Source of the DNA: Sminthopsis crassicaudata
Lineage: Eukaryota
Reading direction: 5' to 3'
NCBI RefSeq assembly: GCF_048593235.1
Contig: NC_133620.1
Span: forward strand, 200,882,852 to 200,946,851
Length of the DNA: 64,000 bases
How positions within the stretch are numbered: position 1 is the stretch's first letter; every line of letters starts with the position of its first letter. This document shows, in pieces, positions 14,093-63,447 of the stretch. A model generated the notes under the pieces. It was not told the origin of the DNA and ran no database searches. It saw only the letters and a list, made by a program, of their open reading frames with translations. The position numbers were made by a program, and so were the translations under genes.

Positions 14093-14142
<50 letters not shown>

Positions 14143-28752: not shown

Positions 28753-29212
28753 TGTAAAGTTCTTGAATTGTGAAGGTCCGGTCGTCTGCTCAATTATAAT
28801 CCTCTGGGAGGAGATCTTTTAAATCTTTTCCTCTGTGCACAGGTTTCTTGGGAGCTCTGAATCTCCTCCAGCTCTTGTCTTTCCCCAAATCAAACTGGTT
28901 TCCTTTCAGCCTGCCTGGTGTCACCACTCTATCCCAGAGTAGATTCTCTCAGACCCAAGGCTGCCCTTCTTTTATCCTCCCAGAGAATGTGCCTGTAAGA
29001 ACTCAGCAGGGCGTAGGGAAAAACTTCCACCAATGAACTTGCTCCTCTTAGAATTCCTAAGGTATAAACTCCCTATAAAGGCCGGAAACAAAGGTCTGAG
29101 CCAGAGAACTGTCAAGTCGACCTGAGTTCTCACCTTGTCACTGTCCAGACAACCTGAGTTCTCACCTTGTCACTGTCCAGACAACCTGAGTTGTCACCTT
29201 GTAATCCTAACA
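28753..29212 (-). mobile_element. LTR 1 (3'-most/edge LTR, 460 bp, 2.5 x 32-bp U3 repeats at 29121-29202)
   Basis: TGTTAGG...CTTTACA termini on the minus strand; preceded by a polypurine tract; diverged from the internal LTRs. Confidence 0.92.
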
Positions 29213-29230
29213 TCTGTCCCTTTCTTTTCA
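29213..29230 (-). promoter_or_regulatory. Polypurine tract (repeated next to LTRs 1-7)
   Basis: Minus strand ...GAAAAGAAAGGGACAGA directly abuts the TG of the LTR. Confidence 0.85.
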
Positions 29231-29584
29231 TTTAGAACATAGGGTGGTCATGACCTTGAAACATAAATCCATCAATATGGGAGGTATTACACATAATTAC
29301 ATAAATTACATAAGCACATAGTAATATAGTAACATAGTGACATAATACATGCTAGAAGTATGTAACAAATAACATGATCAAATAATCATAAATTGAGAAT
29401 TCATAAATGTCCATAAGTTCATTGTCCATTAATCTCATCTTATGTTAGGAAATCCAATGATTCCTGCTGGTTTTAAAGTTCTTTAACAGTCTTCTTATCA
29501 GCCATGGTCTTTCAGTGTCAGATGTTTCTTAGATCTTCTCCTTTGCTTTAAGGTCTTTCTCTTTTTCTCTCTCTCTCTCTGAGT

Positions 29585-31264
29585 GCTTGTTGCCACCTAT
29601 CTGTTTCCTTCTTCATCTGTTTCCTTCTTTCATTAAAATACAAGTAAACCCTCTCTCCCAGGCAGTTGACCTATCTAATTTCCTTCTATTTACCACTTTC
29701 TAAATCTCTTTTCATCATCTGGCAATTGCATTGGAGTTGTATGCACTGGACATAGCCCTGTTGGTTTAAAAGGCCTGCATTCTCCCCAAGTGTAATCTAT
29801 TTTTGCAATCGGATTGCCTTTTGGCTGACTGATCAGGTAATCCCTTTCTTTCATGTGATTGCTTTTCAGCTGATAGATCAAATCAGAGTCCTGACCTCCT
29901 AAAGGCTCTTTGGGTGTAACCTCAGTTGCAATCATTCCCCACCTATCCTTTGCTTGATATCTTGGAGCTGGGCCCCACTTCTCATTTCCCTGGGTCAATC
30001 TGCATTCTGAGGCCCAGTGAAAGCCTTTGTGACATTTTGGACATGGAGTTTTAGGTCTTCTTTCACCCTGTCTTCTCACTCTATCTCCATATCTACATTG
30101 AGCTCTTAGGGGTCCAATTTTTCCACATTGGAAACATGGACGAATTTCTCTAGAAATCCCTGGCCAGGAGGGACCCTGTCTTTCCATGTTCATCATAGTC
30201 TGGGTGTAAAAAGCATTTGTTCCCACTGTGGCACATAGTCTTATGATCTCCTCTAAAGGAGCATCTTTGTCTAATCCCCATATAATTCTTTTGCAAATCT
30301 CATTGGCATTTTCCTTAGCCAGACGTCTGGTCATTATTTCTGTAGCTGCATCTTCTCCAATAGTTCTCTGACAGCAGTTTGTAGACGTCCTACAAAATCC
30401 GCAAAAGGTTCATTGGGACCTTGCTATATTTTAGTGAAAGCCTCTCCCTGATCTTTCTGTCCAGGGAGGACACCCCAAGGTTTTATTGCAGCCTTAGAAA
30501 TTTGCTCATACACTGTCATGGGATAATTAATCTGCTCTGAATTCTCTCCATACCGACCTTCACCAGCTAGCTGGTCAAAAATGAATTGTTTGTTAACTCC
30601 TGTTTCCATATTATGTCTGACTTGAATTCTACATAATTCATGAAAGTCTGAAAGCCACAAATTTTGTCCAGGTTCTAAACACATCCCAGCTATGGATTTC
30701 TTTCTTTTTAAAATTTTTTTTTATTAATTTTATAATTATAACATTTTTTGACAGTACATATGCATAGGTAATTTTTTACAACATTATCCCTTGTACTCCT
30801 TCTGTTCCGAATTTTCCCCTCCTTCCCTCCACCCCCTCCCCTAGATGGCAGGCTTTCCCATACATATTAAATATGTTATAGTATAACCTAGGTACAATAT
30901 ATACGTGCAGAACCGAATTTTGTTGTTGTTGTTGTATTTGGAAGGTAAAAATAACCTGGGAAGAAAAACAAAAAATGAAAACAGTTTACACTCATTTCCC
31001 AGTGTTCCCTCTCTGGGTGTAGCTGATTCTGTCCATCATTGATCAATTGGAACTGAATTAGATCTTCTCTTTGTTGAAGATATCCACTTCCATCAGAATG
31101 TATCCTCATGCAGTATCGTTGTTGAAGTGTATAATGATCTCCTGGTTCTGCTCAATTTCACTCACTAGCTATGGATTTCCAATCATTCAAGGTTAGGATT
31201 TCATAAGACAAATTATCTAGTCACATTTTAACATAAGATGATTTAGCCCCATAAATAGCGCAAC
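29585..31264 (-). pseudogene. Unit 1 betaretrovirus-like gag (CA-NC) remnant plus integrase C-terminal remnant
   Basis: MHR-like QGPNEPFADFVGRL; CCHC knuckles (first has H to P, second is CPKCHKGFHWASEC); GGGAAAT slippery site at 29984-29990; IN-like AWERGFTCI; stops, frameshift and L1 insertion. Confidence 0.9.
30701..31166 (-). mobile_element. 5'-truncated L1 3'UTR inserted in gag, 13-bp TSD (unit 1)
   Basis: TSD agctatggatttc at 30688-30700 and 31167-31179; A-rich tail on the minus strand. Confidence 0.9.
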
Positions 31265-31301
31265 TTTTTTTCAGATACATAATTTTATTGAAAAAAAATT
31301 C

Positions 31302-31433
31302 TTTTTTTTTTTTTTAGGCTGGGGTTAAGTGACTTGCCCAGGGTCACACAGCTAGGAAGTGTTAAGCATCTGAACTCGGGTCCTCCTGAATTCAGGGCTG
31401 TTGCTCTATCCACTGAGCCACCTAGCTGCCCCC
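31302..31433 (-). mobile_element. WSINE1 in the RANBP3 3'UTR (unit 1, 12-bp-deleted form)
   Basis: GGGGGCAGCTAGGTGG head through to an A14 tail on the minus strand. Confidence 0.9.
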
Positions 31434-31834
31434 AATTTTACTCAAATCTAAAGGAGTGTGGCTTCGATGTTTTTGCCCTAAAGAGTAAACCTCTTCAATG
31501 GCAGGATATGCATGTATAAAATCACTCGTCCCAAGGAGGGCTTGTGAGTGACAAGCCAATATGCCATTTCAATGAAAAAAGGGGGAAGGAAGGTTATTTT
31601 TCTGCTCATCAATATGATGAGCTTTCGTGTCCCAAACCACATTCCGGCAGTTTTCTGAGTCTGCTTTGTGTGGAATCTACTGATCCAGGCCCAAAAAACC
31701 AAACAAACAGAACAGGGATGCATGGTTCCTAAGTCCTGGAGCCGCCAACACTGCCTGGAACGATTGCGGCGCTGCCGGGGGAAGGGGGGAGAGTGGACAA
31801 GCAGCAGCCTTGCAAGCGGATGAGCTTCCAGCTG

Positions 31835-33154
31835 CTATGTGCTCCCGCCGGTCTGCCCATCCCCTTCATCACCGGTGGACTCTCCAGTGGATGCAGAAGG
31901 AGCCAGAACATCATCATCGCTGTCCTCCTCATTTGACTGTGTCACTTGAGGCTCTGGAGCTGGGATCTTGGTCTCCTGTTCTTGTTCTATCCTGCTGCGC
32001 AATGCTAAGATCCGGTGATGCAGTGCTGCATACAACTGCCCAGTATCTCTGGAGCTGGCGGAGATCAGGAACACTTTGACTCCCTGACCCTCAGTGTCCA
32101 TGGCTGTGATTCGAATGCTCTTCTCATTGGCTTTGTCAATCTGCATCTGTGCCCACAGCTTGGTGTTGAGCATAAGCCGCAGGCTCCCCTGGGTCCGCAT
32201 TACCAGTCGAGATGGTAACGTCCCATCATCTGTGGAAGCCATGTCATTAAGTCTGAGTAGTCCTCTGCCTCTTTCCACCCAAGACTGTGATGTTTTGTCA
32301 AACACAAACAACTTGCCTTGGATCTGTAATACGTTGCTCTCTGCCTCTTCCCCGGTGATCACTTCCACCTTTTCTAGTAAACACTTCCGGGCTGTGGCCT
32401 TGGTGTAGGCAGCTGCTGACTCTGCCAGTGACTCTGAAACATTATTAGCTTTCTCAGGGGTGGCTTCTAGGGAGGAGGATTCTGAGCCGGATTCAGCAGC
32501 AGTATTGTCCTTGCTGACATCTCTACTAGATTCACTGGGTTTGGGTGGATTCAGCACTCTTTCACTCATGTTCTGTCCAAATATAAATTTGTTGCTGGAG
32601 GCACCAGCAGTATTCGTTGAGTTCTCGAAACCGGAGCTGATGTATTGTAGGAAATAGTTGGTTAGAGAGGGTGTTTCAGAGCTCGGATGCCCTGCATTCT
32701 CTAAGTCACTTGTTGCAGCATTTTCATGTCCTAGCTTGTCAGCAGATTCAGAAGGATTCCTCAATGCACTATTATTTATTGATTCAGATGGAGCTGCTCC
32801 TTGACAGTCTGAAGGTACCTTAGCACCATTGGTGCCACTGTTAGGAACTGTTTGTAAAAGTACCTTTGGCTGGGGAGCTTGTAATACTGCTGAGCACAGC
32901 ACACTTCGCTGCTCTTCCTTAGGTTTCTGGCTTGGTAGACCTGCACTGGGTGCCTGACCATGGATCAGTGTGGGAGGCTTCAGTTGGGATCCATTGCTCT
33001 TTTCCTCTGACTGTGATGGAGGAAATGGAGTTAATGAAGAAGTTCTTTCCCGTTTTACAGGAGGACAGCAGTTTCCATCTTCTCTGTCGGAATCTTCTCT
33101 ATCTCCTGGACTTGAACCTTCAGCGGATCTCTTTTGAGATTTCAGTTTCCTCAT
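31835..33154 (-). CDS. RANBP3: RANBP3 retrogene copy 1 (439 aa, intronless, N-terminally truncated, internal in-frame gap)
   Basis: PPVKRERTSS NLS, KFIFGQNMSERV and the Ran-binding domain (KLFVFDKTSQSWVERGRGLLRLND) match RANBP3; no introns; 3'UTR and AATAAA (31284-31289) follow. Confidence 0.93.
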   Translation of the reverse strand: MRKLKSQKRSAEGSSPGDREDSDREDGNCCPPVKRERTSSLTPFPPSQSEEKSNGSQLKPPTLIHGQAPSAGLPSQKPKEEQRSVLCSAVLQAPQPKVLLQTVPNSGTNGAKVPSDCQGAAPSESINNSALRNPSESADKLGHENAATSDLENAGHPSSETPSLTNYFLQYISSGFENSTNTAGASSNKFIFGQNMSERVLNPPKPSESSRDVSKDNTAAESGSESSSLEATPEKANNVSESLAESAAAYTKATARKCLLEKVEVITGEEAESNVLQIQGKLFVFDKTSQSWVERGRGLLRLNDMASTDDGTLPSRLVMRTQGSLRLMLNTKLWAQMQIDKANEKSIRITAMDTEGQGVKVFLISASSRDTGQLYAALHHRILALRSRIEQEQETKIPAPEPQVTQSNEEDSDDDVLAPSASTGESTGDEGDGQTGGST

Positions 33155-33201
33155 GCTTACTTCTGGGATAGAGAGACTGTCCCAGAATCAGGATCCTGTC
33201 T

Positions 33202-33219
33202 GTCCCTGTTCGGGAGCCA
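33202..33219 (-). promoter_or_regulatory. Primer-binding site, tRNA-Lys(UUU)-type (present in all 7 units)
   Basis: TGGCTCCCGAACAGGGAC is 17/18 identical to the canonical Lys3 PBS TGGCGCCCGAACAGGGAC. Confidence 0.88.
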
Positions 33220-33457
33220 AAATTGACGTGGGGCGCTAATATGTAACGTTCTTGAATTGTGAGGGTCCGGTCGTCTGCTCAATTATAATCCTTCTCTGGG
33301 AGGAGATCTGTAAAATCTTTTCCTCTGTGCACCGGTTTCTTGGGAGCTCTGAATCTCCTCCAGCTCTTGTCTTTCCCCAAATCAAACTGGTCTCCTTTCA
33401 GCCTGGCGTCACCACACTATCCCTGAGTCAATTCTCCCAGACCCAATGCTGCCCTCC

Positions 33458-33524
33458 TTTTATCCTCCCAGAGAATGGGCGTGGGATAACGCAAGGGCTT
33501 CTGGGAAACATGACTTCCACCAAT
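33458..33524 (-). promoter_or_regulatory. Putative LTR core promoter (CCAAT box at 33520-33524, TATA-like GATAAAA at 33458-33464)
   Basis: Motif spacing of about 60 bp in the expected U3 position; inferred from motifs only. Confidence 0.5.
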
Positions 33525-33610
33525 GAGCTTGCTCCTCCTAGAATTCCTAAGGTGTAAACTCCCTTTAAAGGCCCTAACCAAAGGTCTGAGCCAGAGAACT
33601 ATCAAGTCGA

Positions 33611-34076
33611 CCTGAGTTTTCACCTTGTCACTGTCCAGACAACCTGAGTTCCCCCCTTGTCACTGTCCAGACAACCTGAGTTCTCCCCTTGTCACTGTCC
33701 AGACAACCTGAGTTCTCCCCTTGTCACTGTCCAGACAACCTGAGTTCTCCCCTTGTCACTGTCCAGACAACCTGAGTTCTCCCCTTGTCACTGTCCAGAC
33801 AACCTGAGTTCTCCCCTTGTCACTGTCCAGACAACCTGAGTTCTCCCCTTGTCACTGTCCAGACAACCTGAGTTCTCCCTTTGTCACTGTTCAGACAACC
33901 TGAGTTCTCCCCTTGTCACTGTCCAGACAACCTGAGTTCTCCCCTTGTCACTGTCCAGATGACCTGAGTTCTCCCCTTGTCACTGTCCAGACGACCTGAG
34001 TTCTCCCCTTGTCACTGTCCAGACGACCTGAGTTCTCCCCTTGTCACTGTCCAGACGACCTGAGTTCTCACCTTGT
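33611..34076. repeat. 32-bp U3 minisatellite cctgagttctccccttgtcactgtccagac(a/g)a; also at 38477-38942, 43343-43808, 48210-48644, 53046-53479, 57897-58394, 62809-63437
   Basis: Exact 32-bp periodicity (e.g. 33611, 33643 ... 34059); no spacers. Confidence 0.97.
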
Positions 34077-34458
34077 AATCCTAACATCTGTCCCTTTCTT
34101 TTCATTTAGAACATAGGGTGGTCATGACCTTGAAACATAAATCCATCAATATGGGAGGTATTACACATAATTACATAAATTACATAAGCACATAGTAATA
34201 TAGTAACATAGTGACATAATACATGCTAGAAGTATGTAACAAATAACATGATCAAATAATCATAAATTGAGAATTCATAAATGTCCATAAGTTCATTGTC
34301 CATTAATCTCATCTTATGTTAGGAAATCCAATGATTCCTGCTGGTTTTAAAGTTCTTTAACAGTCTTCTTATCAGCCATGCTCTTTCAGTGTCAGATGTT
34401 TCTTAGATCTTCTCCTTTGTTTTAAGGTCTTTCTCTTTTTCTCTCTCTCTCTCTGAGT

Positions 34459-36130
34459 GCTTGTTGCCACCTATCTGTTTCCTTCTTCATCTGTATCCTT
34501 CTTTCATTAAAATACAAGTAAACCCTCTCTCCCAGGCAGTTGACCTATCTAATTTCCTTCTATTTACCACTTTCTAAATCTCTTTTCATCATCTGGCAAT
34601 TGCATTGGAGTTGTATGCACTGGACATAGCCCTGTTGGTTTAAAAGGCCTGCATTCTCCCCAAGTGTAATCTATTTTTGCAATCGGATTGCCTTTTGGCT
34701 GACTGATCAGGTAATCCCTTTCTTTCATGTGATTGCTTTTCGGCTGATAGATCACATCAGAGTCCTGACCTCCTAAAGGCTCTTTGGGTGTAACCACAGT
34801 TGCAATCATTCCCCACCTATCCTTTGCTTGATATCTTGGAGCTGGGCCCCACTTCTCATTTCCCTGGGTCAATCTGCATTCTGAGGCCCAGTGAAAGCCT
34901 TTGTGACATTTTGGACATGGGGTTTTAGGTCTTCTTTCACCCTGTCTTCTCACTCTATCTCCATATCTACATTGAGCTCTTAGGGGTCCAATTTTTCCAC
35001 ATTGAAAACATGGACGAATTTCTCTAGAAATCCCTGGCCAGGAGGGACCCTGTCTTTCCATGTTCATCATAGTCTGGGTGTAAAAAGCATTTGTTCCCAC
35101 TGTGGCACATAGTCTTTCCTCTAAAGGAGCATCTTTGTCTAATCCCCATATAATTCTTTTGCAAATCTCATTGGCATTTTCCTTAGCCAGACGTCTGGTC
35201 ATTATTTCTGTAGCTGCATCTTCTCCAATAGTTCTTTGACAGCAGTTTGTAGACGTCCTACAAAATCCGCAATAGGTTCATTGAGACCTTGCTGTATTTT
35301 AGTGAAAGCCTCTCCCTGATCTTTCTGTCCAGGGAGGACACCCCAAGCTTTTATTGCAGCCTTAGAAATTTGCTCATACACTGTCATGGGATAATTAATC
35401 TGTTCTGAATTCTTTCCATACCGACCTTCACCAGCTAGTTGGTCAAAAATGAATTGTTTGTCAACTCCTGTTTCCATATTATGTCTGACTTGAATTCTAC
35501 ATAATTCATGAAAGTCTGAAAGCCACAAGTTTTGTCCAGGTTCTAAACACATCCCAGCTATGGATTTCATTCTTTTTTAAAATTTTTTTATTAATTTTAT
35601 AATTATAACATTTTTGACAGTACATATGCATAGGTAATTTTTTACAACATTATCCCTTGTACTCCTTCTGTTCCGAATTTTCCCCTCCTTCCCTCCACCC
35701 CCTCCCCTAGATGGCAGGCTTTCCCATACATATTAAATATGTTATAGTATAACCTAGATACAATATATACGTGCAGAACCGAATTTTGTTGTTGTTGTTG
35801 TATTCGGAAGGTAAAAATAACCTGGGAAGAAAAACAAAAAATGAAAACAGTTTACACTCATTTCCCAGTGTTCCCTCTCTGGGTGTAGCTGATTCTGTCC
35901 ATCATTGATCAATTGGAACTGAATTAGATCTTCTCTTTGTTGAAGATATCCACTTCCATCAGAATGTATCCTCATGCAGTATCGTTGTTGAAGTGTATAA
36001 TGATCTCCTGGTTCTGCTCAATTTCACTCACTAGCTATGGATTTCCAATCATTCAAGGTTAGGATTTCATAAGACAAATTATCTAGTCACATTTTAACAT
36101 AAGATGATTTAGCCCCATAAATAGCGCAAC
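34459..36130 (-). pseudogene. Unit 2 gag/IN remnant with L1 insert (35569-36032)
   Basis: ORFs 34564-35202 and 35202-35570; same TSD. Confidence 0.9.
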
Positions 36131-36167
36131 TTTTTTTCAGATACATAATTTTATTGAAAAAAAATTC

Positions 36168-36299
36168 TTTTTTTTTTTTTTAGGCTGGGGTTAAGTGACT
36201 TGCCCAGGGTCACACAGCTAGGAAGTGTTAAGCATCTGAACTCGGGTCCTCCTGAATTCAGGGCTGTTGCTCTATCCACTGAGCCACCTAGCTGCCCCC
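36168..36299 (-). mobile_element. WSINE1 in 3'UTR (unit 2)
   Basis: As unit 1. Confidence 0.9.
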
Positions 36300-36700
36300 A
36301 ATTTTACTCAAATCTAAAGGAGTGTGGCTTCGATGTTTTTGCCCTAAAGAGTAAACCTCTTCAATGGCAGGATATGCATGTATAAAATCACTCGTCCCAA
36401 GGAGGGCTTGTGAGTGACAAGCCAATATGCCATTTCAATGAAAAAAGGGGGAAGGAAGGTTATTTTTCTGCTCATCAATATGATGAGCTTTCGTGTCCCA
36501 AACCACATTCCGGCAGTTTTCTGAGTCTGCTTTGTGTGGAATCTACTGATCCAGGCCCAAAAAACCAAACAAACAGAACAGGGATGCATGGTTCCTAAGT
36601 CCTGGAGCCGCCAACACTGCCTGGAACGATTGCGGCGCTGCCGGGGGAAGGGGGGAGAGTGGACAAGCAGCAGCCTTGCAAGCGGATGAGCTTCCAGCTG

Positions 36701-38020: not shown

Positions 38021-38107
38021 GCTTACTTCTGGGATAGAGAGACTGTCCCAGAATCAGGATCCTGTCTGTCCCTGTTCGGGAGCCAAAATTGACGTGGGGC
38101 GCTAATA

Positions 38108-40996: not shown

Positions 40997-41033
40997 TTTT
41001 TTTCAGATACATAATTTTATTGAAAAAAAATTC

Positions 41034-52589: not shown

Positions 52590-52676
52590 GCTTACTTCTG
52601 GGATAGAGAGACTGTCCCAGAATCAGGATCCTGTCTGTCCCTGTTCGGGAGCCAAAATTGACGTGGGGCGCTAATA

Positions 52677-53489: not shown

Positions 53490-53861
53490 TCTGTCCCTTT
53501 CTTTTCATTTAGAACATAGGGTGGTCATGACCTTGAAACATAAATCCATCAATATGGGAGGTATTACACATAATTACATAAATTACATAAGCACATAGTA
53601 ATATAGTAACATAGTGACATAATACATGCTAGAAGTATGTAACAAATAACATGATCAAATAATCATAAATTGAGAATTCATAAATGTCCATAAGTTCATT
53701 GTCCATTAATCTCATCTTATGTTAGGAAATCCAATGATTCCTGCTGGTTTTAAAGTTCTTTAACAGTCTTCTTATCAGCCATGCTCTTTCAGTGTCAGAT
53801 GTTTCTTAGATCTTCTCCTTTGTTTTAAGGTCTTTCTCTTTTTCTCTCTCTCTCTCTGAGT

Positions 53862-55533: not shown

Positions 55534-55571
55534 TTTTTTTCAGATACATAATTTTATTGAAAAAAAAATTC

Positions 55572-55719
55572 TTTTTTTTTTTTTTTTTTAGGCTGGGGTT
55601 AAGTGACTTGCCCAGGGTCACACAGCTAGGAAGTGTTAAGCGTCTGAGACCAGATCTGAACTCGGGTCCTCCTGAATTCAGGGCTGGTGCTCTGTCCACT
55701 GCGCCACCTAGCTGCTCCC
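55572..55719 (-). mobile_element. WSINE1 in 3'UTR (unit 6, long form without the 12-bp deletion)
   Basis: Retains gtctgagaccag. Confidence 0.9.
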
Positions 55720-56120
55720 AATTTTACTCAAATCTAAAGGAGTGTGGCTTCGATTTTTTTGCCCTAAAGAGTAAACCTCTTCAATGGCAGGTTATGCATG
55801 TATAAAATCACTCGTCCCAAGGAGGGCTTGTGAGTGACAAGCCAATATGCCATTTCAATGAAAAAAGGGGGAAGGAAGGTTATTTTTCTGCTCATCAATA
55901 TGATGAGCTTTCGTGTCCCAAACCACATTCCGGCAGTTTTCTGAGTCTGCTTTGTGTGGAATCTACTGATCCAGGCCCAAAAAACCAAACAAACAGAACA
56001 GGGATGCATGGTTCCTAAGTCCTGGAGCCGCCAACACTGCCTGGAACGATTGCGGCGCTGCTGGGGGAAGGGGGGAGAGTGGACAAGCAGCAGCCTTGCA
56101 AGCGGATGAGCTTCCAGCTG

Positions 56121-57440
56121 CTATGTGCTCCCGCCGGTCTGCCCATCCCCTTCATCACCGGTGGACTCTCCAGTGGATGCAGAAGGAGCCAGAACATCAT
56201 CATCGCTGTCCTCCTCATTTGACTGTGTCACTTGAGGCTCTGGAGCTGGGATCTTGGTCTCCTGTTCTTGTTCTATCCTGCTGCGCAATGCTAAGATCCG
56301 GTGATGCAGTGCTGCGTACAACTGCCCAGTATCTCTGGAGCTGGCGGAGATCAGGAACACTTTGACTCCCTGACCCTCAGTGTCCATGGCTGTGATTCGA
56401 ATGCTCTTCTCATTGGCTTTGTCAATCTGCATCTGTGCCCACAGCTTGGTGTTGAGCATAAGCCGCAGGCTCCCCTGGGTCCGCATTACCAGTCGAGATG
56501 GTAACGTCCCATCATCTGTGGAAGCCATGTCATTAAGTCTGAGTAGTCCTCTGCCTCTTTCCACCCAAGACTGTGATGTTTTGTCAAACACAAACAACTT
56601 GCCTTGGATCTGTAATACGTTGCTCTCTGCCTCTTCCCCGGTGATCACTTCCACCTTTTCTAGTAAACACTTCCGGGCTGTGGCCTTGGTGTAGGCAGCT
56701 GCTGACTCTGCCAGTGACTCTGAAACATTATTAGCTTTCTCAGGGGTGGCTTCTAGGGAGGAGGATTCTGAGCCGGATTCAGCAGCAGTATTGTCCTTGC
56801 TGACATCTCTACTAGATTCACTGGGTTTGGGTGGATTCAGCACTCTTTCACTCATGTTCTGTCCAAATATAAATTTGTTGCTGGAGGCACCAGCAGTATT
56901 CGTTGAGTTCTCGAAACCGGAGCTGATGTATTGTAGGAAATAGTTGGTTAGATAGGGTGTTTCAGAGCTCGGATGCCCCGCATTCTCTAAGTCACTTGTT
57001 GCAGCATTTTCATGTCCTAGCTTGTCAGCAGATTCAGAAGGATTCCTCAATGCACTATTATTTATTGATTCAGATGGAGCTGCTCCTTGACAGTCTGAAG
57101 GTACCTTAGCACCATTGGTGCCACTGTTAGGAACTGTTTGTAAAAGTACCTTTGGCTGGGGAGCTTGTAATACTGCTGAGCACAGCACACTTCGCTGCTC
57201 TTCCTTAGTTTTCTGGCTTGGTAGACCTGCACTGGGTGCCTGACCATGGATCAGTGTGGGAGGCTTCAGTTGGGATCCATTGCTCTTTTCCTCTGACTGT
57301 GATGGAGGAAATGGAGTTAATGAAGAAGTTCTTTCCCGTTTTACAGGAGGACAGTAGTTTCCATCTTCTCTGTCGGAATCTTCTCTATCTCCTGGACTTG
57401 AACCTTCAGCGGATCTCTTTTGAGATTTCAGTTTCCTCAT
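56121..57440 (-). CDS. RANBP3: RANBP3 retrogene copy 6 (439 aa; Y29, T78, Y163)
   Basis: Intact ORF with three amino-acid differences from copy 1. Confidence 0.93.
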   Translation of the reverse strand: MRKLKSQKRSAEGSSPGDREDSDREDGNYCPPVKRERTSSLTPFPPSQSEEKSNGSQLKPPTLIHGQAPSAGLPSQKTKEEQRSVLCSAVLQAPQPKVLLQTVPNSGTNGAKVPSDCQGAAPSESINNSALRNPSESADKLGHENAATSDLENAGHPSSETPYLTNYFLQYISSGFENSTNTAGASSNKFIFGQNMSERVLNPPKPSESSRDVSKDNTAAESGSESSSLEATPEKANNVSESLAESAAAYTKATARKCLLEKVEVITGEEAESNVLQIQGKLFVFDKTSQSWVERGRGLLRLNDMASTDDGTLPSRLVMRTQGSLRLMLNTKLWAQMQIDKANEKSIRITAMDTEGQGVKVFLISASSRDTGQLYAALHHRILALRSRIEQEQETKIPAPEPQVTQSNEEDSDDDVLAPSASTGESTGDEGDGQTGGST

Positions 57441-57527
57441 GCTTACTTCTGGGATAGAGAGACTGTCCCAGAATCAGGATCGTGTCTGTCCCTGTTCGGG
57501 AGCCAAAATTGACGTGGGGCGCTAATA

Positions 57528-58404
57528 TGTAACGTTCTTGAATTGTGAGGGTCCGGTCGTCTGCTCAATTATAATCCTTCTCTGGGAGGAGATCTGTAAA
57601 ATCTTTTCCTCTGTGCACCGGTTTCTTGGGAGCTCTGAATCTCCTCCAGCTCTTGTCTTTCCCCAAATCAAACTGGTCTCCTTTCAGCCTGGCGTCACCA
57701 CACTATCCCTGAGTCAATTCTCCCAGACCCAATGCTGCCCTCCTTTTATCCTCCCAGAGAATGGACGTGGGATAACGCAAGGGCTTCTGGGAAACATGAC
57801 TTCCACCAATGAGCTTGCTCCTCCTAGAATTCCTAAGGTGTAAACTCCCTTTAAAGGCCCTAACCAAAGGTCTGAGCCAGAGAACTATCAAGTCGACCTG
57901 AGTTTTCACCTTGTCACTGTCCAGACAACCTGAGTTCCCCCCTTGTCACTGTCCAGACAACCTGAGTTCTCCCCTTGTCACTGTCCAGACAACCTGAGTT
58001 CTCCCCTTGTCACTGTCCAGACAACCTGAGTTCTCCCCTTGTCACTGTCCAGACAACCTGAGTTCTCCCCTTGTCACTGTCCAGACAACCTGAGTTCTCC
58101 CCTTGTCACTGTCCAGACAACCTGAGTTCTCCCCTTGTCACTGTCCAGACAACCTGAGTTCTCCCTTTGTCACTGTCCAGACAACCTGAGTTCTCCCCTT
58201 GTCACTGTCCAGACGACCTGAGTTCTCCCCTTGTCACTGTCCAGACGACCTGAGTTCTCCCCTTGTCACTGTCCAGACGACCTGAGTTCTCCCCTTGTCA
58301 CTGTCCAGACGACCTGAGTTCTCCCCTTGTCACTGTCCAGACGACCTGAGTTCTCCCCTTGTCACTGTCCAGACGACCTGAGTTCTCACCTTGTAATCCT
58401 AACA
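57528..58404 (-). mobile_element. LTR 7 (877 bp, 15.5 repeats)
   Basis: As LTR 2 with one extra repeat. Confidence 0.95.
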
Positions 58405-58776
58405 TCTGTCCCTTTCTTTTCATTTAGAACATAGGGTGGTCATGACCTTGAAACATAAATCCATCAATATGGGAGGTATTACACATAATTACATAAATTA
58501 CATAAGCACATAGTAATATAGTAACATAGTGACATAATACATGCTAGAAGTATGTAACAAATAACATGATCAAATAATCATAAATTGAGAATTCATAAAT
58601 GTCCATAAGTTCATTGTCCATTAATCTCATCTTATGTTAGGAAATCCAATGATTCCTGCTGGTTTTAAAGTTCTTTAACAGTCTTCTTATCAGCCATGCT
58701 CTTTCAGTGTCAGATGTTTCTTAGATCTTCTCCTTTGTTTTAAGGTCTTTCTCTTTTTCTCTCTCTCTCTCTGAGT

Positions 58777-60448
58777 GCTTGTTGCCACCTATCTGTTTCC
58801 TTCTTCATCTGTATCCTTCTTTCATTAAAATACAAGTAAACCCTCTCTCCCAGGCAGTTGACCTATCTAATTTCCTTCTATTTACCACTTTCTAAATCTC
58901 TTTTCATCATCTGGCAATTGCATTGGAGTTGTATGCACTGGACATAGCCCTGTTGGTTTAAAAGGCCTGCATTCTCCCCAAGTGTAATCTATTTTTGCAA
59001 TCGGATTGCCTTTTGGCTGACTGATCAGGTAATCCCTTTCTTTCATGTGATTGCTTTTCGGCTGATAGATCACATCAGAGTCCTGACCTCCTAAAGGCTC
59101 TTTGGGTGTAACCACAGTTGCAATCATTCCCCACCTATCCTTTGCTTGATATCTTGGAGCTGGGCCCCACTTCTCATTTCCCTGGGTCAATCTGCATTCT
59201 GAGGCCCAGTGAAAGCCTTTGGGACATTTTGGACATGGGGTTTTAGGTCTTCTTTCACCCTGTCTTCTCACTCTATCTCCATATCTACATTGAGCTCTTA
59301 GGGGTCCAATTTTTCCACATTGAAAACATGGACGAATTTCTCTAGAAATCCCTGGCCAGGAGGGACCCTGTCTTTCCATGTTCATCATAGTCTGGGTGTA
59401 AAAAGCATTTGTTCCCACTGTGGCACATAGTCTTTCCTCTAAAGGAGCATCTTTGTCTAATCCCCATATAATTCTTTTGCAAATCTCATTGGCATTTTCC
59501 TTAGCCAGACGTCTGGTCATTATTTCTGTAGCTGCATCTTCTCCAATAGTTCTTTGACAGCAGTTTGTAGACGTCCTACAAAATCCGCAATAGGTTCATT
59601 GAGACCTTGCTGTATTTTAGTGAAAGCCTCTCCCTGATCTTTCTGTCCAGGGAGGACACCCCAAGCTTTTATTGCAGCCTTAGAAATTTGCTCATACACT
59701 GTCATGGGATAATTAATCTGTTCTGAATTCTTTCCATACCGACCTTCACCAGCTAGCTGGTCAAAAATGAATTGTTTGTCAACTCCTGTTTCCATATTAT
59801 GTCTGACTTGAATTCTACATAATTCATGAAAGTCTGAAAGCCACAAGTTTTGTCCAGGTTCTAAACACATCCCAGCTATGGATTTCATTCTTTTTTAAAA
59901 TTTTTTTATTAATTTTATAATTATAACATTTTTGACAGTACATATGCATAGGTAATTTTTTACAACATTATCCCTTGTACTCCTTCTGTTCCGAATTTTC
60001 CCCTCCTTCCCTCCACCCCCTCCCCTAGATGGCAGGCTTTCCCATACATATTAAATATGTTATAGTATAACCTAGATACAATATATACGTGCAGAACCGA
60101 ATTTTGTTGTTGTTGTTGTATTCGGAAGGTAAAAATAACCTGGGAAGAAAAACAAAAAATGAAAACAGTTTACACTCATTTCCCAGTGTTCCCTCTCTGG
60201 GTGTAGCTGATTCTGTCCATCATTGATCAATTGGAACTGAATTAGATCTTCTCTTTGTTGAAGATATCCACTTCCATCAGAATGTATCCTCATGCAGTAT
60301 CGTTGTTGAAGTGTATAATGATCTCCTGGTTCTGCTCAATTTCACTCACTAGCTATGGATTTCCAATCATTCAAGGTTAGGATTTCATAAGACAAATTAT
60401 CTAGTCACATTTTAACATAAGATGATTTAGCCCCATAAATAGCGCAAC
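58777..60448 (-). pseudogene. Unit 7 gag/IN remnant with L1 insert (59887-60350)
   Basis: ORFs 58882-59520 and 59520-59888. Confidence 0.9.
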
Positions 60449-60486
60449 TTTTTTTCAGATACATAATTTTATTGAAAAAAAAATTC

Positions 60487-60631
60487 TTTTTTTTTTTTTT
60501 TAGGCTGGGGTTAAGTGACTTGCCCAGGGTCACACAGCTAGGAAGTGTTAAGCGTCTGAGACCAGATCTGAACTCGGGTCCTCCTGAATTCAGGGCTGGT
60601 GCTCTGTCCACTGCGCCACCTAGCTGCTCCC
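60487..60631 (-). mobile_element. WSINE1 in 3'UTR (unit 7, long form)
   Basis: Retains gtctgagaccag. Confidence 0.9.
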
Positions 60632-61032
60632 AATTTTACTCAAATCTAAAGGAGTGTGGCTTCGATTTTTTTGCCCTAAAGAGTAAATCTCTTCAATGGC
60701 AGGATATGCATGTATAAAATCACTCGTCCCAAGGAGGGCTTGTGAGTGACAAGCCAATATGCCATTTCAATGAAAAAAGGGGGAAGGAAGGTTATTTTTC
60801 TGCTCATCAATATGATGAGCTTTCGTGTCCCAAACCACATTCAGGCAGTTTTCTGAGTCTGCTTTGTGTGGAATCTACTGATCCAGGCCCAAAAAACCAA
60901 ACAAACAGAACAGGGATGCATGGTTCCTAAGTCCTGGAGCCGCCAACACTGCCTGGAACGATTGCGGCGCTGCTGGGGGAAGGGGGGAGAGTGGACAAGC
61001 AGCAGCCTTGCAAGCGGATGAGCTTCCAGCTG

Positions 61033-62352
61033 CTATGTGCTCCCGCCGGTCTGCCCATCCCCTTCATCACCGGTGGACTCTCCAGTGGATGCAGAAGGAG
61101 CCAGAACATCATCATCGCTGTCCTCCTCATTTGACTGTGTCACTTGAGGCTCTGGAGCTGGGATCTTGGTCTCCTGTTCTTGTTCTATCCTGCTGCGCAA
61201 TGCTAAGATCCGGTGATGCAGTGCTGCATACAACTGCCCAGTATCTCTGGAGCTGGCGGAGATCAGGAACACTTTGACTCCCTGACCCTCAGTGTCCATG
61301 GCTGTGATTCGAATGCTCTTCTCATTGGCTTTGTCAATCTGCATCTGTGCCCACAGCTTGGTGTTGAGCATAAGCCGCAGGCTCCCCTGGGTCCGCATTA
61401 CCAGTCGAGATGGTAACGTCCCATCATCTGTGGAAGCCATGTCATTAAGTCTGAGTAGTCCTCTGCCTCTTTCCACCCAAGACTGTGATGTTTTGTCAAA
61501 CACAAACAACTTGCCTTGGATCTGTAATACGTTGCTCTCTGCCTCTTCCCCGGTGATCACTTCCACCTTTTCTAGTAAACACTTCCGGGCTGTGGCCTTG
61601 GTGTAGGCAGCTGCTGACTCTGCCAGTGACTCTGAAACATTATTAGCTTTCTCAGGGGTGGCTTCTAGGGAGGAGGATTCTGAGCCGGATTCAGCAGCAG
61701 TATTGTCCTTGCTGACATCTCTACTAGATTCACTGGGTTTGGGTGGATTCAGCACTCTTTCACTCATGTTCTGTCCAAATATAAATTTGTTGCTGGAGGC
61801 ACCAGCAGTATTCGTTGAGTTCTCGAAACCGGAGCTGATGTATTGTAGGAAATAGTTGGTTAGAGAGGGTGTTTCAGAGCTCGGATGCCCCGCATTCTCT
61901 AAGTCACTTGTTGCAGCATTTTCATGTCCTAGCTTGTCAGCAGATTCAGAAGGATTCCTCAATGCACTATTATTTATTGATTCAGATGGAGCTGCTCCTT
62001 GACAGTCTGAAGGTACCTTAGCACCATTGGTGCCACTGTTAGGAACTGTTTGTAAAAGTACCTTTGGCTGGGGAGCTTGTAATACTGCTGAGCACAGCAC
62101 ACTTCGCTGCTCTTCCTTAGTTTTCTGGCTTGGTAGACCTGCACTGGGTGCCTGACCATGGATAAGTGTGGGAGGCTTCAGTTGGGATCCATTGCTCTTT
62201 TCCTCTGACTGTGATGGAGGAAATGGAGTTAATGAAGAAGTTCTTTCCCGTTTTACAGGAGGACAGCAGTTTCCATCTTCTCTGTCAGAATCTTCTCTAT
62301 CTCCTGGACTTGAACCTTCAGCGGATCTCTTTTGAGATTGCAGTTTCCTCAT
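61033..62352 (-). CDS. RANBP3: RANBP3 retrogene copy 7 (439 aa; Q5, T78)
   Basis: Intact ORF with two amino-acid differences from copy 1. Confidence 0.93.
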   Translation of the reverse strand: MRKLQSQKRSAEGSSPGDREDSDREDGNCCPPVKRERTSSLTPFPPSQSEEKSNGSQLKPPTLIHGQAPSAGLPSQKTKEEQRSVLCSAVLQAPQPKVLLQTVPNSGTNGAKVPSDCQGAAPSESINNSALRNPSESADKLGHENAATSDLENAGHPSSETPSLTNYFLQYISSGFENSTNTAGASSNKFIFGQNMSERVLNPPKPSESSRDVSKDNTAAESGSESSSLEATPEKANNVSESLAESAAAYTKATARKCLLEKVEVITGEEAESNVLQIQGKLFVFDKTSQSWVERGRGLLRLNDMASTDDGTLPSRLVMRTQGSLRLMLNTKLWAQMQIDKANEKSIRITAMDTEGQGVKVFLISASSRDTGQLYAALHHRILALRSRIEQEQETKIPAPEPQVTQSNEEDSDDDVLAPSASTGESTGDEGDGQTGGST

Positions 62353-62439
62353 GCTTACTTCTGGGATAGAGAGACTGTCCCAGAATCAGGATCGTGTCTG
62401 TCCCTGTTCGGGAGCCAAAATTGACGTGGGGCGCTAATA

Positions 62440-63447
62440 TGTAACGTTCTTGAATTGTGAGGGTCCGGTCGTCTGCTCAATTATAATCCTTCTCTGGGAG
62501 GAGATCTGTAAAATCTTTTCCTCTGTGCACAGGTTTCTTGGGAGCTCTGAATCTCCTCCAGCTCTTGTCTTTCCCCAAATCAAACTGGTCTCCTTTCAGC
62601 CTGGCGTCACCACACTATCCCTGAGTCAATTCTCCCAGACCCAATGCTGCCCTCCTTTTATCCTCCCAGAGAATGGGCGTGGGATAACGCAAGGGCTTCT
62701 GGGAAACATGACTTCCACCAATGAGCTTGCTCCTCCTAGAATTCCTAAGGTGTAAACTCCCTTTAAAGGCCCTAACCAAAGGTCTGAGCCAGAGAACTAT
62801 CAAGTCGACCTGAGTTTTCACCTTGTCACTGTCCAGACAACCTGAGTTCCCCCCTTGTCACTGTCCAGACAACCTGAGTTCTCCCCTTGTCACTGTCCAG
62901 ACGACCTGAGTTCTCCCCTTGTCACTGTCCAGACAACCTGAGTTCTCCCCTTGTCACTGTCCAGACGACCTGAGTTCTCCCCTTGTCACTGTCCAGACGA
63001 CCTGAGTTCTCCCCTTGTCACTGTCCAGACGACCTGAGTTCTCCCCTTGTCACTGTCCAGACGACCTGAGTTCTCCCCTTGTCACTGTCCAGACGACCTG
63101 AGTTCTCCCCTTGTCACTGTCCAGACGACCTCAGTTCTCCCCTTGTCTCTGTCCTGACGACCTGAGTTCTCCCCTTGTCACTGTCCTGACGACCTGAGTT
63201 CTCCCCTTGTCACTGTCCTGACGACCTGAGTTCTCCCCTTTTCACTGTCCAGACGACCTGAGTTCTCACCTTGTCACTGTCCAGACGACCTGAGTTCTCA
63301 CCTTGTCACTGTCCAGACGACCTGAGTTCTCCCCCTTGTCACTGTCCAGACACACCTGAGTTCTCACCTTGTCACTGTCCACGACAACCTGAGTTCTCAC
63401 CTTGTCACTGTCCAGACAACCTGAATTCTCACCTGGTCATCCTAATA
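62440..63447 (-). mobile_element. LTR 8 (5'-most LTR, about 1008 bp, about 19.5 repeats, irregular distal end)
   Basis: Same unique part as LTRs 2-7; ends in the degenerate ...tcacctggtcatcctaata. Confidence 0.9.

What the first reader, a model, noticed from the sequence alone, without database searches (positions are those of the whole stretch)
28753..63447. ERV-chassis macrosatellite amplifying an LTR-driven RANBP3 retrogene
Seen: seven tandem ~4.87-kb units, each with LTR, PBS, an 87-nt leader, an intact intronless 439-aa RANBP3 ORF, 3'UTR and AATAAA, followed by dead gag/IN and a PPT. Known: RANBP3 is a CRM1/XPO1 export cofactor and Ran-binding protein, and ORF-bearing macrosatellites exist in mammals (D4Z4/DUX4, RS447/USP17). 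Inferred: a host nuclear-export gene was captured into a provirus and amplified at the DNA level as an expression cassette, giving a lineage-specific multicopy gene family. I know of no description of this, but cannot search.
Basis: partly seen in the sequence, partly recalled or inferred. Interest (0 to 1): 0.95.

Follow-up and report, generated by a model that had tools for sequence, protein, structure and literature searches.

The report
Captured RANBP3 gene in amplified provirus
A fat-tailed dunnart chromosome carries seven tandem copies of an old, defective endogenous retrovirus that once picked up a spliced copy of the host nuclear-export gene RANBP3; the structure is real and unusual, but the captured gene has evolved almost neutrally, so a function is unproven.

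Summary
The repeat is real. On the minus strand of 28753-63447 lie eight LTRs and seven internal units (4.84-5.04 kb). Each unit holds an intact intronless 439-aa RANBP3 ORF. The window is Sminthopsis crassicaudata; the intron-containing parent gene lies on another chromosome.

The ERV is a class II, gag-only, non-autonomous element of about 3.5 kb, with three relatives found in the same genome. RANBP3 RNA replaced the 3' leader and about the first 200 Gag codons. Thirteen exact exon joins, a 9-nt microhomology at the 5' junction, a short one at the 3' junction, no poly(A) tail and no TSD fit LTR-mediated retroposition by template switching.

The "3'UTR AATAAA" lies in gag-derived DNA. The "dead IN" is the Gag C-terminus.

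LTR1-7 are near-identical; the 3'-terminal LTR is about 10% diverged. This indicates one insertion roughly 10-30 My old, expanded recently by unequal LTR recombination.

The retro branch has 16 synonymous and 39 non-synonymous changes (ratio 0.74, parent 0.09), so constraint is relaxed, although the ORF is intact. Both processes are known; their combination is new. Expression and function are untested.

The parts
28753..63447 (-). Whole array: 8 LTRs and 7 internal units (LTR-int-LTR-int...-LTR)
62440..63447 (-). LTR1, 5'-terminal (1008 bp; 32-bp minisatellite 62806-63439, 19.7 copies)
57528..58404 (-). LTR2, shared (minisatellite 57896-58394, 15.6 copies)
52677..53489 (-). LTR3, shared (minisatellite 53045-53479, 13.6 copies)
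47841..48654 (-). LTR4, shared (minisatellite 48209-48644, 13.6 copies)
42974..43818 (-). LTR5, shared (minisatellite 43342-43808, 14.6 copies)
38108..38952 (-). LTR6, shared (minisatellite 38476-38942, 14.6 copies; TATA-like ATAAAAG at 38329)
33242..34086 (-). LTR7, shared (minisatellite 33610-34076, 14.6 copies)
28753..29212 (-). LTR8, 3'-terminal (460 bp, about 2.5 minisatellite copies, about 10% diverged from LTR1-7; its true end may lie near 28707)
62353..62439 (-). Unit 1 ERV leader, 87 nt (PBS 62417-62400)
57441..57527 (-). Unit 2 ERV leader (PBS 57505-57488)
52590..52676 (-). Unit 3 ERV leader (PBS 52654-52637)
47754..47840 (-). Unit 4 ERV leader (PBS 47818-47801)
42887..42973 (-). Unit 5 ERV leader (PBS 42951-42934)
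38021..38107 (-). Unit 6 ERV leader (PBS 38085-38068; retained splice-donor-like GTAAGC just before the ATG)
33155..33241 (-). Unit 7 ERV leader (PBS 33219-33202)
60726..62352 (-). Unit 1 RANBP3-derived segment (24-nt intronic cassette, 13 exons, 307 nt of 3'UTR); intact 439-aa ORF 61033-62352
55814..57440 (-). Unit 2 RANBP3-derived segment; ORF 56121-57440
50963..52589 (-). Unit 3 RANBP3-derived segment; ORF 51270-52589 (= P0001)
46127..47753 (-). Unit 4 RANBP3-derived segment; ORF 46434-47753 (major form, P0122)
41260..42886 (-). Unit 5 RANBP3-derived segment; ORF 41567-42886 (major form)
36394..38020 (-). Unit 6 RANBP3-derived segment; ORF 36701-38020 (major form); cassette 37997-38020
31528..33154 (-). 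Unit 7 RANBP3-derived segment; ORF 31835-33154 (major form)
58882..60725 (-). Unit 1 gag remnant (from about Gag residue 193-217 to the natural Gag stop); broken
53967..55813 (-). Unit 2 gag remnant; broken
49132..50962 (-). Unit 3 gag remnant; broken
44296..46126 (-). Unit 4 gag remnant; broken
39430..41259 (-). Unit 5 gag remnant; broken; its last 212 codons are open (CA C-terminus, two zinc knuckles, Gag tail)
34564..36393 (-). Unit 6 gag remnant; broken (at least 1-2 frameshifts, at least 3 stops, 2 nested retroposon insertions)
29690..31527 (-). Unit 7 gag remnant; broken; the most diverged copy
58405..58881 (-). Unit 1 non-coding tail with PPT (58420-58405)
53490..53966 (-). Unit 2 tail with PPT (53505-53490)
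48655..49131 (-). Unit 3 tail with PPT (48670-48655)
43819..44295 (-). Unit 4 tail with PPT (43834-43819)
38953..39429 (-). Unit 5 tail with PPT (38968-38953)
34087..34563 (-). Unit 6 tail with PPT (34102-34087); collinear with the tails of L004, L008 and L009; no pro, pol, IN or env signal
29213..29689 (-). Unit 7 tail with PPT (29228-29213)

Best explanation
The locus is one old insertion of a defective class II (ERV-K-like) endogenous retrovirus of a gag-only, non-autonomous family. Before it integrated, this element had acquired a spliced RANBP3 transcript by LTR-mediated retroposition. During reverse transcription the enzyme switched from ERV RNA (within gag) into the RANBP3 3'UTR. It copied the mRNA back through 13 exon joins to a cryptic SINE-derived exon, then switched back into the ERV leader at a 9-nt microhomology. 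RANBP3 thereby replaced the 3' leader and about the first 200 codons of gag.

The recombinant integrated roughly 10-30 My ago. Much later (about 3 My ago or less, with the central units far younger) unequal homologous recombination expanded it to seven internal units that share single LTRs. The first exchange lay in or near the 32-bp U3 minisatellite; later exchanges were between whole units.

Shown here: the anatomy, the parent gene, both junctions, the family architecture and the order of events. Inferred: the RNA-level mechanism and the dates.

On an LTR-started transcript the captured ATG would be the first AUG, so each unit is a potential LTR-driven RANBP3 gene. The coding sequence has drifted almost neutrally, however. 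I consider the array most likely a by-product of recombination that retains coding potential, not a proven adaptation.
For: Species and parent gene.

Intronless copy: 13 unique GT-AG-compatible joins.

Cassette: 24/24 match inside a RANBP3 intron, unique in 81.6 kb even at up to 3 mismatches, bounded by AG and GT, and conserved in Antechinus.

ERV family: L004, L008 and L009 are all LTR-gag-tail-LTR elements of about 3.5 kb. They are collinear with the array's gag and tail at 84-86.5% over 1.5 kb. L008 has an intact 607-aa Gag with Gag_p10, p24 and two zinc knuckles. NCBI names one of these Gags 'endogenous retrovirus group K member 5 Gag polyprotein-like'.

5' junction: the array leader is collinear with three relatives through the donor-like site to GAGGAAACT and then follows the cassette. 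The chance of a microhomology of 9 nt or more is about 8e-5.

3' junction: it lies in mid-3'UTR with a short microhomology, no poly(A) tail and no TSD, and ERV sequence is replaced rather than interrupted. These are the diagnostic features given in PMC5131818.

Array history: LTR1-7 differ by 3/373 nt or fewer, while LTR8 differs by 37-39 mismatches plus 3 gaps. Central units differ by 0-2 per 4 kb and edge units by 11-40. The differences of unit 7 sit next to LTR8. The shared-LTR mechanism is as described for HML-2 arrays.

Dating: retro-to-parent synonymous divergence (26/302) is about equal to or greater than Sminthopsis-to-Antechinus (19/302). Site patterns give a near-trichotomy, 7:5:3. 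Crown Dasyuridae is dated 20.6-29.3 Mya.

Relaxed constraint.

First-AUG property: 0 ATG in 310 nt where about 5 are expected.
Against: No target-site duplication flanks the array (ATAAAG against ACTGAA). The two terminal LTRs might therefore come from different proviruses, or the flank has been rearranged.

The 3' junction microhomology is short and blurred by later substitutions.

Only three family relatives could be fetched, and the dunnart genome could not be searched for dispersed copies of the RANBP3-carrying element or for an empty site.

An intact 1.32-kb ORF after 55 substitutions, with no indel, has a probability of only about 0.001-0.02 under strict neutrality. The same-age gag remnant carries several disabling lesions. 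Some constraint on the ORF cannot be excluded.

Two units are 100% identical, and copy number rests on one assembly.
Confidence: 0.8

Rival explanations
1. One reading: the array is a selected, LTR-driven multicopy RANBP3 gene family, maintained and amplified for dosage. It could be either a host co-option or an ERV accessory function tied to CRM1-dependent export.
For: All seven ORFs are intact. P(no stop and no frameshift) under neutrality is about 0.001-0.02, while the same-age gag remnant is broken several times. The captured ATG is the first AUG after the TATA-like box. The NLS, one FG motif and the RanBD are retained. NCBI annotates the ORFs as genes. RanBP3 is part of the CRM1 export complexes used by complex retroviruses.
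Against: pN/pS is 0.74 on the retro branch and not different from 1 (p=0.34), against 0.09 in the parent. There are about 39 private replacements, many at positions invariant across marsupials and a monotreme, six of them in the RanBD. Variation between copies is 4 synonymous to 5 non-synonymous. CpG sites have decayed about 4-fold faster than other sites. The LTR has no canonical poly(A) signal. No orthologue is annotated in Antechinus or Sarcophilus. The finding was also selected because the ORF is intact.
Confidence: 0.22
2. A variant for the 5' step: classical read-through transduction. A provirus sat in the RANBP3 intron 26 bp upstream of the cassette. Its read-through RNA, spliced from the cassette's GT donor into downstream exons, was packaged. 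A direct-repeat jump at GAGGAAACT then deleted the viral interior. That provirus is now a solo LTR.
For: A 492-bp sense-oriented solo LTR lies at L002 33857-34348. It has a 5-6-bp imperfect duplication and is absent from the empty site in Antechinus. It is the only LTR-like match in 81.6 kb and ends 26 bp before the first captured base. The array LTR's last 75 nt or so (U5) resembles this solo LTR better (z 11.8) than the L004-type LTR (z 5.8). Its U3/R resembles the L004 type (z up to 32), as expected if the 5' and 3' ends of the recombinant RNA came from different elements.
Against: Overall identity between the solo LTR and the array LTR is about 55%, barely above shuffled sequence. The U5 signal rests on a 32-nt stretch at 90%. 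The PBS and leader are L004-like. The proximity was noticed after the fact.
Confidence: 0.35
3. An ordinary L1-mediated processed RANBP3 pseudogene that happened to land inside a pre-existing ERV.
For: L1 is the main retroposition engine in mammals (PMC5131818). L1 and SINE insertions occur inside this very unit.
Against: There is no poly(A) tail, and the 3'UTR is cut about 307 nt after the stop. No TSD flanks the insert. About 0.7 kb of ERV leader and gag is missing exactly at the insert. Microhomology is present at the junctions.
Confidence: 0.03
4. The copy number or the array itself is an assembly artefact, either an over-expansion or a mis-join of a one- or two-copy locus.
For: Units 5 and 6 are 100% identical over 4866 bp, and four ORFs are identical. 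Only one assembly was seen.
Against: Units differ in minisatellite copy number (13.6-19.7) and carry unit-specific substitutions. These form a graded pattern with the edges most diverged. LTR8 is a distinct terminal LTR.
Confidence: 0.08

Closest known systems
LTR-mediated retrocopies (template-switch retroposition; Tan et al. 2016, PMC5131818), including 3 human and 8 mouse cases
   Same: A partial spliced host mRNA replaces part of the interior of an LTR element. Microsimilarity is present at the fusion points. There is no poly(A) tail and no L1-type TSD. Both LTRs are present, and the product is a pseudo-non-autonomous LTR element.
   Different: Here the complete coding region of a natural short isoform is carried and is still open after roughly 10-30 My. 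The 5' end comes from a cryptic intronic cassette. The carrier is already a gag-only element. The locus was later amplified into a seven-unit array.
Host mRNA capture by crocodilian ERVs (KIT-ligand, nectin3; PMC4299795)
   Same: A germline-fixed ERV carries an intronless host ORF. The capture costs viral coding sequence, as in the nectin3 case.
   Different: The crocodilian ORFs are dispersed in several proviral copies and show purifying selection. The dunnart ORF is known from one locus, was amplified by DNA recombination, and evolves near neutrally.
Shared-LTR tandem proviral arrays (HERV-K HML-2 at 7p22.1 and 12 other loci, up to 6 copies, bioRxiv 10.64898/2026.09.22.753638; plant tandem LTR-RTs and kangaroo centromere arrays, PMC11899658)
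   Same: n internal regions with n+1 LTRs, a single LTR between neighbours, explained by unequal recombination between 5' and 3' LTRs.
   Different: Seven units. The cargo is a host gene rather than viral genes. A greatly expanded U3 minisatellite is the likely exchange site. The terminal 3' LTR preserves the pre-amplification state.
Acutely transforming (oncogene-transducing) retroviruses, read-through and recombination model
   Same: Viral 5' leader joined to spliced host exons, a non-homologous 3' junction back into viral sequence, and a defective genome. A candidate donor LTR sits just upstream of the first captured base in the host gene.
   Different: The element is endogenous and old. 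The cargo is a nuclear-transport cofactor with no evidence of transforming activity. The 5' join is a microhomology jump that retains the intron side of the viral donor site, not a donor-to-acceptor splice.
ORF-bearing macrosatellites such as D4Z4/DUX4
   Same: Kilobase-scale tandem units, each with an intronless ORF of retrogene origin.
   Different: The unit boundaries here are retroviral LTRs, and growth is explained by LTR-LTR exchange. Copy-number polymorphism and expression are unknown.

Membership tests
LTR-mediated retrocopy (PMC5131818) | Intronless copy of a host transcript | tested here: met
   13 exon joins on unique GT-AG boundaries of L002
LTR-mediated retrocopy (PMC5131818) | The retrocopy replaces part of the LTR element's interior (discontinuous flanks) rather than interrupting it | tested here: met
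   Relative to L004, L008 and L009, the 3' leader and about the first 193-217 Gag codons are missing exactly at the insert
LTR-mediated retrocopy (PMC5131818) | Microsimilarity at the fusion points | tested here: met
   5': GAGGAAACT, 9 nt, present in the leaders of L004 and L008 (8/9 in L009), chance about 8e-5. 3': 4 nt exact, 7/8 imperfect, chance about 0.02
LTR-mediated retrocopy (PMC5131818) | No poly(A) tail and no L1-type TSD around the retrocopy; mRNA often truncated | tested here: met
   3'UTR homology ends about 307 nt after the stop and joins directly to gag
LTR-mediated retrocopy (PMC5131818) | Co-transcription with the flanking LTR | not testable with these tools
   No expression data. 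Only a TATA-like box and the absence of upstream ATGs are seen
Integrated provirus | 4-6-bp target-site duplication flanking the terminal LTRs | tested here: not met
   ATAAAG against ACTGAA, and no better match if LTR8 ends near 28707
Integrated provirus | TG..CA LTRs, a PBS next to U5 and a PPT next to U3 | tested here: met
   The PBS is 17/18 to the Lys3-type PBS. Oddity: a 22-nt spacer separates the LTR from the PBS, against 3 nt in relatives
Shared-LTR tandem proviral array (unequal LTR recombination) | n internal regions, n+1 LTRs, one LTR between neighbours, same orientation | tested here: met
   7 internal regions and 8 LTRs
Shared-LTR tandem proviral array (unequal LTR recombination) | Internal LTRs are 5'/3' hybrids and the terminal LTRs keep the older state | tested here: met
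   LTR2-7 match LTR1 in the 373-nt downstream part (3 differences or fewer). LTR8 is about 10% diverged and has about 2.5 minisatellite repeats
Shared-LTR tandem proviral array (unequal LTR recombination) | Reciprocal or variant alleles (solo LTR, other copy numbers) in the population | not testable with these tools
   Only one assembly was available
Class II (betaretrovirus-like, ERV-K-like) ERV | Gag with p10 matrix, p24 capsid and two CCHC knuckles; Lys-type PBS | tested here: met
   Pfam on P0127 and P0267, the NCBI name and the PBS. No pro or pol is available for a phylogeny
RANBP3 protein family | RanBD plus N-terminal NLS and FG motif | tested here: met
   Pfam Ran_BP1. PDB 2crf, 2y8f and the NLS peptide 5xzx all hit. 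85-90% identical to marsupial RANBP3
L1-mediated processed retrogene | Poly(A) tail and 7-20-bp TSD | tested here: not met
ORF-bearing macrosatellite (D4Z4-like) | Copy-number polymorphism and unit-borne expression | not testable with these tools
   The tandem ORF-bearing units are confirmed. Nothing is known on polymorphism or expression

The most novel reading that the evidence does not exclude
The captured RANBP3 is not a relic but a lineage-specific, LTR-driven and dosage-amplified nuclear-export cofactor. On this reading it is caught in a conflict with the class II retroviruses that have proliferated in dasyurids. It would be either an ERV-borne accessory gene that boosted CRM1-dependent export, or a host-retained decoy that interferes with it. 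Its many private replacements would then reflect diversifying rather than relaxed selection, and the recent expansion would reflect selection for dose.
Probability: 0.1. Interest if true: 0.85.

Novelty: new variant of a known kind. Interest (0 to 1): 0.6.

Why it matters
This is an unusually legible fossil of host-gene capture by a retrovirus-like element in a mammalian germ line. The parent gene, the exact exon structure, a cryptic exon, both recombination junctions, a candidate donor LTR in the parent intron and uncaptured relatives of the carrier element can all be read from sequence.

It also shows a second route by which an LTR-mediated retrocopy can multiply. Besides re-transposition, proviral LTR-LTR exchange can turn a single retrogene into a macrosatellite of seven potential LTR-driven genes.

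If the ORF proves to be expressed and constrained, it would be a marsupial-specific multicopy paralogue of a CRM1 cofactor with an obvious link to retroviral RNA export. If not, it is a calibrated example of how long an unconstrained ORF can stay open and how fast such arrays grow.

Tried and rejected
- **Integrase remnant in the tail.** No Pfam hit in any stop-to-stop piece at E<=1. The post-NC peptide is the family's Gag C-terminus.
- **P0145 as a polyprotein with IN.** It is a host C2H2 zinc-finger protein that shares a short motif.
- **The AATAAA as RANBP3's poly(A) signal.** It lies in gag-derived DNA.
- **MRKLKSQK as a viral or Gag N-terminus.** It is a RANBP3 intron cassette.
- **Viral-donor-to-host-acceptor splicing for the 5' junction.** Disfavoured, because sequence on the intron side of the conserved donor-like site is retained.
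- **Target-site duplication.** None found.
- **ERV- or RANBP3-like sequence in the flanks.** Only unrelated SINE matches.
- **Rfam.** No family hit in the window.
- **tRNA genes in the fetched loci for a direct PBS test.** None found. The PBS was identified through the literature instead.
- **More family members.** P0126 and P0212 are not on record, one look-up failed for lack of capacity, and L006 holds only a partial element.
- **A dunnart uterus transcriptome paper that mentions RANBP3.** It refers to RANBP3L, a different gene.
- **Resolving the capture relative to the Sminthopsis-Antechinus split.** The site patterns 7:5:3 do not resolve it.

Full report
**Observation.** Tandem Repeats Finder, ORF listing and self-BLAST confirm the repeat. 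On the minus strand there are seven 439-aa ORFs spaced 4835-5043 bp apart. The array has eight LTRs (TG...CA; 813-1008 bp, with the last only 460 bp) and seven internal regions of about 4.02 kb. Neighbouring internal regions share a single LTR.

It has 13.6-19.7 copies in LTR1-7 and about 2.5 in LTR8. Each internal region has, in order:
- an 87-nt leader with a PBS;
- the RANBP3 ORF;
- 307 nt of RANBP3 3'UTR;
- a broken gag remnant;
- a 477-nt non-coding tail that ends in a purine tract abutting the next LTR.

**Identity and source.** The ORF has a Ran_BP1 domain, and its RanBD is about 93% identical to the solved RANBP3 domain. The exact protein is on record from assembly GCA_048593235.1, contig CM109184.1 at about 200.9 Mb, where the ORFs are called as genes. 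Proteins on other contigs of the same assembly are named Sminthopsis crassicaudata. The intron-containing RANBP3 gene (71.6 kb, locus L002) lies on a different chromosome.

**The captured segment.** BLAST of the unit against L002 gives 14 collinear blocks at 89-100% identity. All 13 joins fall on unique GT-AG-compatible exon boundaries. The exon set is that of a natural short isoform (457-aa forms in possum and opossum), except for the first block.

The first block is the 24 nt that encode MRKLKSQK. It matches, 24/24, a site deep inside a RANBP3 intron. That site is bounded by an AG and a GT, lies in an antisense MIR-type SINE, and is unique in the 81.6-kb locus even at three mismatches. It is conserved 24/24 in Antechinus. 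The start codon and N-terminus are therefore host-derived, from a cryptic cassette, and not viral.

Parental homology ends about 307 nt into the 3'UTR, with no poly(A) tract.

**The carrier element.** A library-wide HMMER search with the 212-aa gag ORF found close Gag relatives. Their loci in the same dunnart assembly (L004, L008, L009, on three chromosomes) are all elements of about 3.5 kb with the plan LTR-PBS-leader-gag-tail-LTR and no pro, pol or env.
- L008 encodes an intact 607-aa Gag with p10, p24 and two zinc knuckles.
- NCBI calls L004's Gag 'endogenous retrovirus group K member 5 Gag polyprotein-like'.
- The PBS matches the Lys3-type PBS quoted in PMC2770672 at 17-18 of 18 positions.
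- Related copies occur in a Tasmanian devil assembly (L005, L006).

The array's gag and tail are collinear with these relatives over 1.5 kb at 84-86.5% identity. The stretch right after the RANBP3 3'UTR is gag as well.

No integrase signal exists in any frame of the tail.

In every unit the gag remnant starts at about Gag residue 193-217. It carries at least one or two frameshifts, at least three stops and two nested retroposon insertions. All seven units share the two insertions, so these predate the amplification.

**Junctions and mechanism.** All three relatives have, after the PBS, a conserved donor-like GTGAGT followed nine bases later by GAGGAAACT (AAGGAAACT in L009). The array keeps this arrangement and then continues with the RANBP3 cassette, whose own sequence contains GAGGAAACT. 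The 5' junction thus lies within a 9-nt microhomology, with a chance probability of about 8e-5 in a breakpoint simulation. Sequence on the intron side of the viral donor site is retained, which argues against a simple viral-donor-to-host-acceptor splice.

At the 3' junction the parental UTR, the array and three relatives overlap in a short, partly blurred microhomology: GATT exact and AGTGATT at 7/8, with P about 0.02 for 4 nt or more.

A spliced insert, replacement of about 0.7 kb of ERV sequence, microhomology at both ends, no poly(A) and no TSD are exactly the diagnostic features of LTR-mediated retroposition by double template switching. That mechanism has been described in flies, fish, chicken, mouse and human (PMC5131818). 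L1-mediated nesting is effectively excluded.

**A possible donor provirus.** Twenty-six bases upstream of the cassette, the Sminthopsis RANBP3 intron carries a 492-bp sense-oriented solo LTR with an imperfect 5-6-bp duplication. The site is empty in Antechinus. It is the only LTR-like match in the 81.6-kb locus.

The array LTR's U3/R resembles the L004-type LTR (z up to 32), but its last 75 nt or so (U5) resemble this solo LTR better (z 11.8 against 5.8). That is what reverse transcription would give if the recombinant RNA had its 5' end from an intronic provirus and its 3' end from an L004-type element.

The signal is short and overall identity is near background. I rate this read-through variant at about 0.35.

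**History of the array.** In the 373-nt non-repeat part, LTR1-7 differ by three bases or fewer. LTR8 differs from all of them by 37-39 substitutions and three gaps.
- Internal regions 3-6 differ by 0-2 bases in 4 kb.
- Regions 1 and 2 differ from the others by 11-20 bases.
- Region 7 differs by 23-40 bases, almost all in the half next to LTR8.

This pattern fits one provirus whose two LTRs had already diverged by about 10% when an unequal exchange, in or near the U3 minisatellite, created the first hybrid LTR. Such a hybrid keeps the downstream part of the 5' LTR. Further unit-level exchanges followed, the latest very recent. The same mechanism is described for HML-2 arrays and for plant and kangaroo arrays. 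Integration as a multimer would not leave a single diverged terminal LTR.

No target-site duplication is visible. This remains unexplained.

**Age.** With bilby (L003) and Antechinus (L007) RANBP3 as references, informative sites split 7 (Sminthopsis+retro): 5 (Sminthopsis+Antechinus): 3. Retro-to-parent synonymous differences (26 of about 302 sites) are at least as many as Sminthopsis-to-Antechinus (19). The capture therefore dates to about the crown-dasyurid split or somewhat later. That split is estimated at 20.6-29.3 Mya (PMC5715987). The 10% LTR1-LTR8 divergence is of the same order, so I give 10-30 My.

The roughly 1.2% difference at the array edge scales to a few million years at most. 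The central units are far younger.

**Selection.** On the retro branch there are 16 synonymous and 39 non-synonymous changes (pN/pS 0.74, binomial p=0.34 against neutrality). On the parental branch there are 10 and 3 (0.09; Fisher p=0.003). The four-taxon count gives 13 and 39.
- Replacements hit positions invariant across marsupials and echidna, including six in the RanBD.
- No region is strongly protected.
- Copies differ at 9 sites, 4 synonymous and 5 non-synonymous.
- CpG sites decayed about four times faster than other sites.

Against pure neutrality, 55 random substitutions leave the frame stop-free in only 11-15% of simulations. At the local indel-to-substitution ratio (0.08-0.12), no frameshift is expected in only about 0.5-2% of cases. 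The same-age gag remnant is broken several times.

Because the finding was picked for its intact ORF, I treat this as weak-to-moderate evidence for some constraint.

**Transcript features.** There is a TATA-like box in the LTR and no ATG in the 310 nt before the ORF's ATG (about 5 expected). The LTR has no canonical poly(A) signal. Expression could not be examined.

**Comparison and novelty.** Each process is known: LTR-mediated retrocopies, ERV capture of host mRNAs in crocodilians and shared-LTR proviral arrays. No report of a RANBP3 retrocopy in dasyurids, or of an LTR-mediated retrogene expanded into a proviral array, was found in the searchable library.

I classify it as a new variant of a known kind. 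RanBP3's role in the CRM1 export complexes used by complex retroviruses makes the cargo suggestive, but that link is untested.

**Flanks.** The flanks are ordinary AT-rich DNA with a degraded LINE-1 and microsatellites. The N run at 23212-23358 was left untouched.

1. The PBS comparison was later made with the window's own letters and a paper's quotation.
2. An earlier count gave window coordinates of the two nested retroposon insertions inside the gag remnant. The same positions can be read from HSP bounds printed.

The only exons joined were those of the host RANBP3 gene.

Noticed in passing
L004 9285-12790 approx; L008 4309-7860 approx; L009 3900-7250 approx: A dunnart family of gag-only class II ERVs of about 3.5 kb (LTR-gag-tail-LTR, no pro, pol or env) on at least three chromosomes. 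One copy keeps an intact 607-aa Gag (P0267). Related copies occur in the Tasmanian devil (L005, L006). It is unclear whether this is a non-autonomous parasite of larger ERVs or includes a retained gag gene.
   Followed up: partly
L002 33857-34348 (RANBP3 intron, S. crassicaudata); empty site at L007 about 32706/32707: A Sminthopsis-lineage solo LTR in sense orientation, 26 bp upstream of the cryptic cassette that became the retrogene's first eight codons. It is absent from Antechinus.
   Followed up: yes
window 38086-38107 (and the equivalent in each unit); window about 28707-28752: The array has a 22-nt spacer between the LTR end and the PBS, where relatives have 3 nt. Its CCCCACGT motif recurs 44 nt beyond the alignable end of LTR8, so the true 3' end of the element may be about 45 bp further out. 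No TSD is found under either reading.
   Followed up: partly
window 33610-34076, 38476-38942, 43342-43808, 48209-48644, 53045-53479, 57896-58394, 62806-63439; about 29125-29200: The 32-bp U3 minisatellite has about 3 copies in relatives and about 2.5 in LTR8, but 13.6-19.7 copies in LTR1-7. C/T variant repeats are arranged in blocks. It probably served as the substrate for the first unequal exchange. Any enhancer role is untested.
   Followed up: partly
window about 13700-17900, minus strand: A degraded LINE-1 with reverse transcriptase, endonuclease and ORF1 RBD-like fragments in separate ORFs.
   Followed up: yes
   Followed up: no
retro-ORF, e.g. window 36701-38020: Substitutions on the retrogene branch have a transition:transversion ratio of only 32:27. 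This is low for mammalian neutral DNA and is unexplained.
   Followed up: no
P0145 (2473-aa protein from the representative library): A C2H2 zinc-finger protein carries five repeats of a roughly 30-residue motif that resembles the C-terminal tail of this ERV family's Gag (..W.EC.PFKPT). This may be a Gag-tail-derived linker or a chance match.
   Followed up: no
L007 32730-32753; L003 about 33534-33723: The 24-nt cassette is 24/24 identical in Antechinus, within intron sequence that is about 90% identical. The bilby keeps only a diverged version of the SINE. No annotated RANBP3 isoform among 120 examined uses the cassette.
   Followed up: partly
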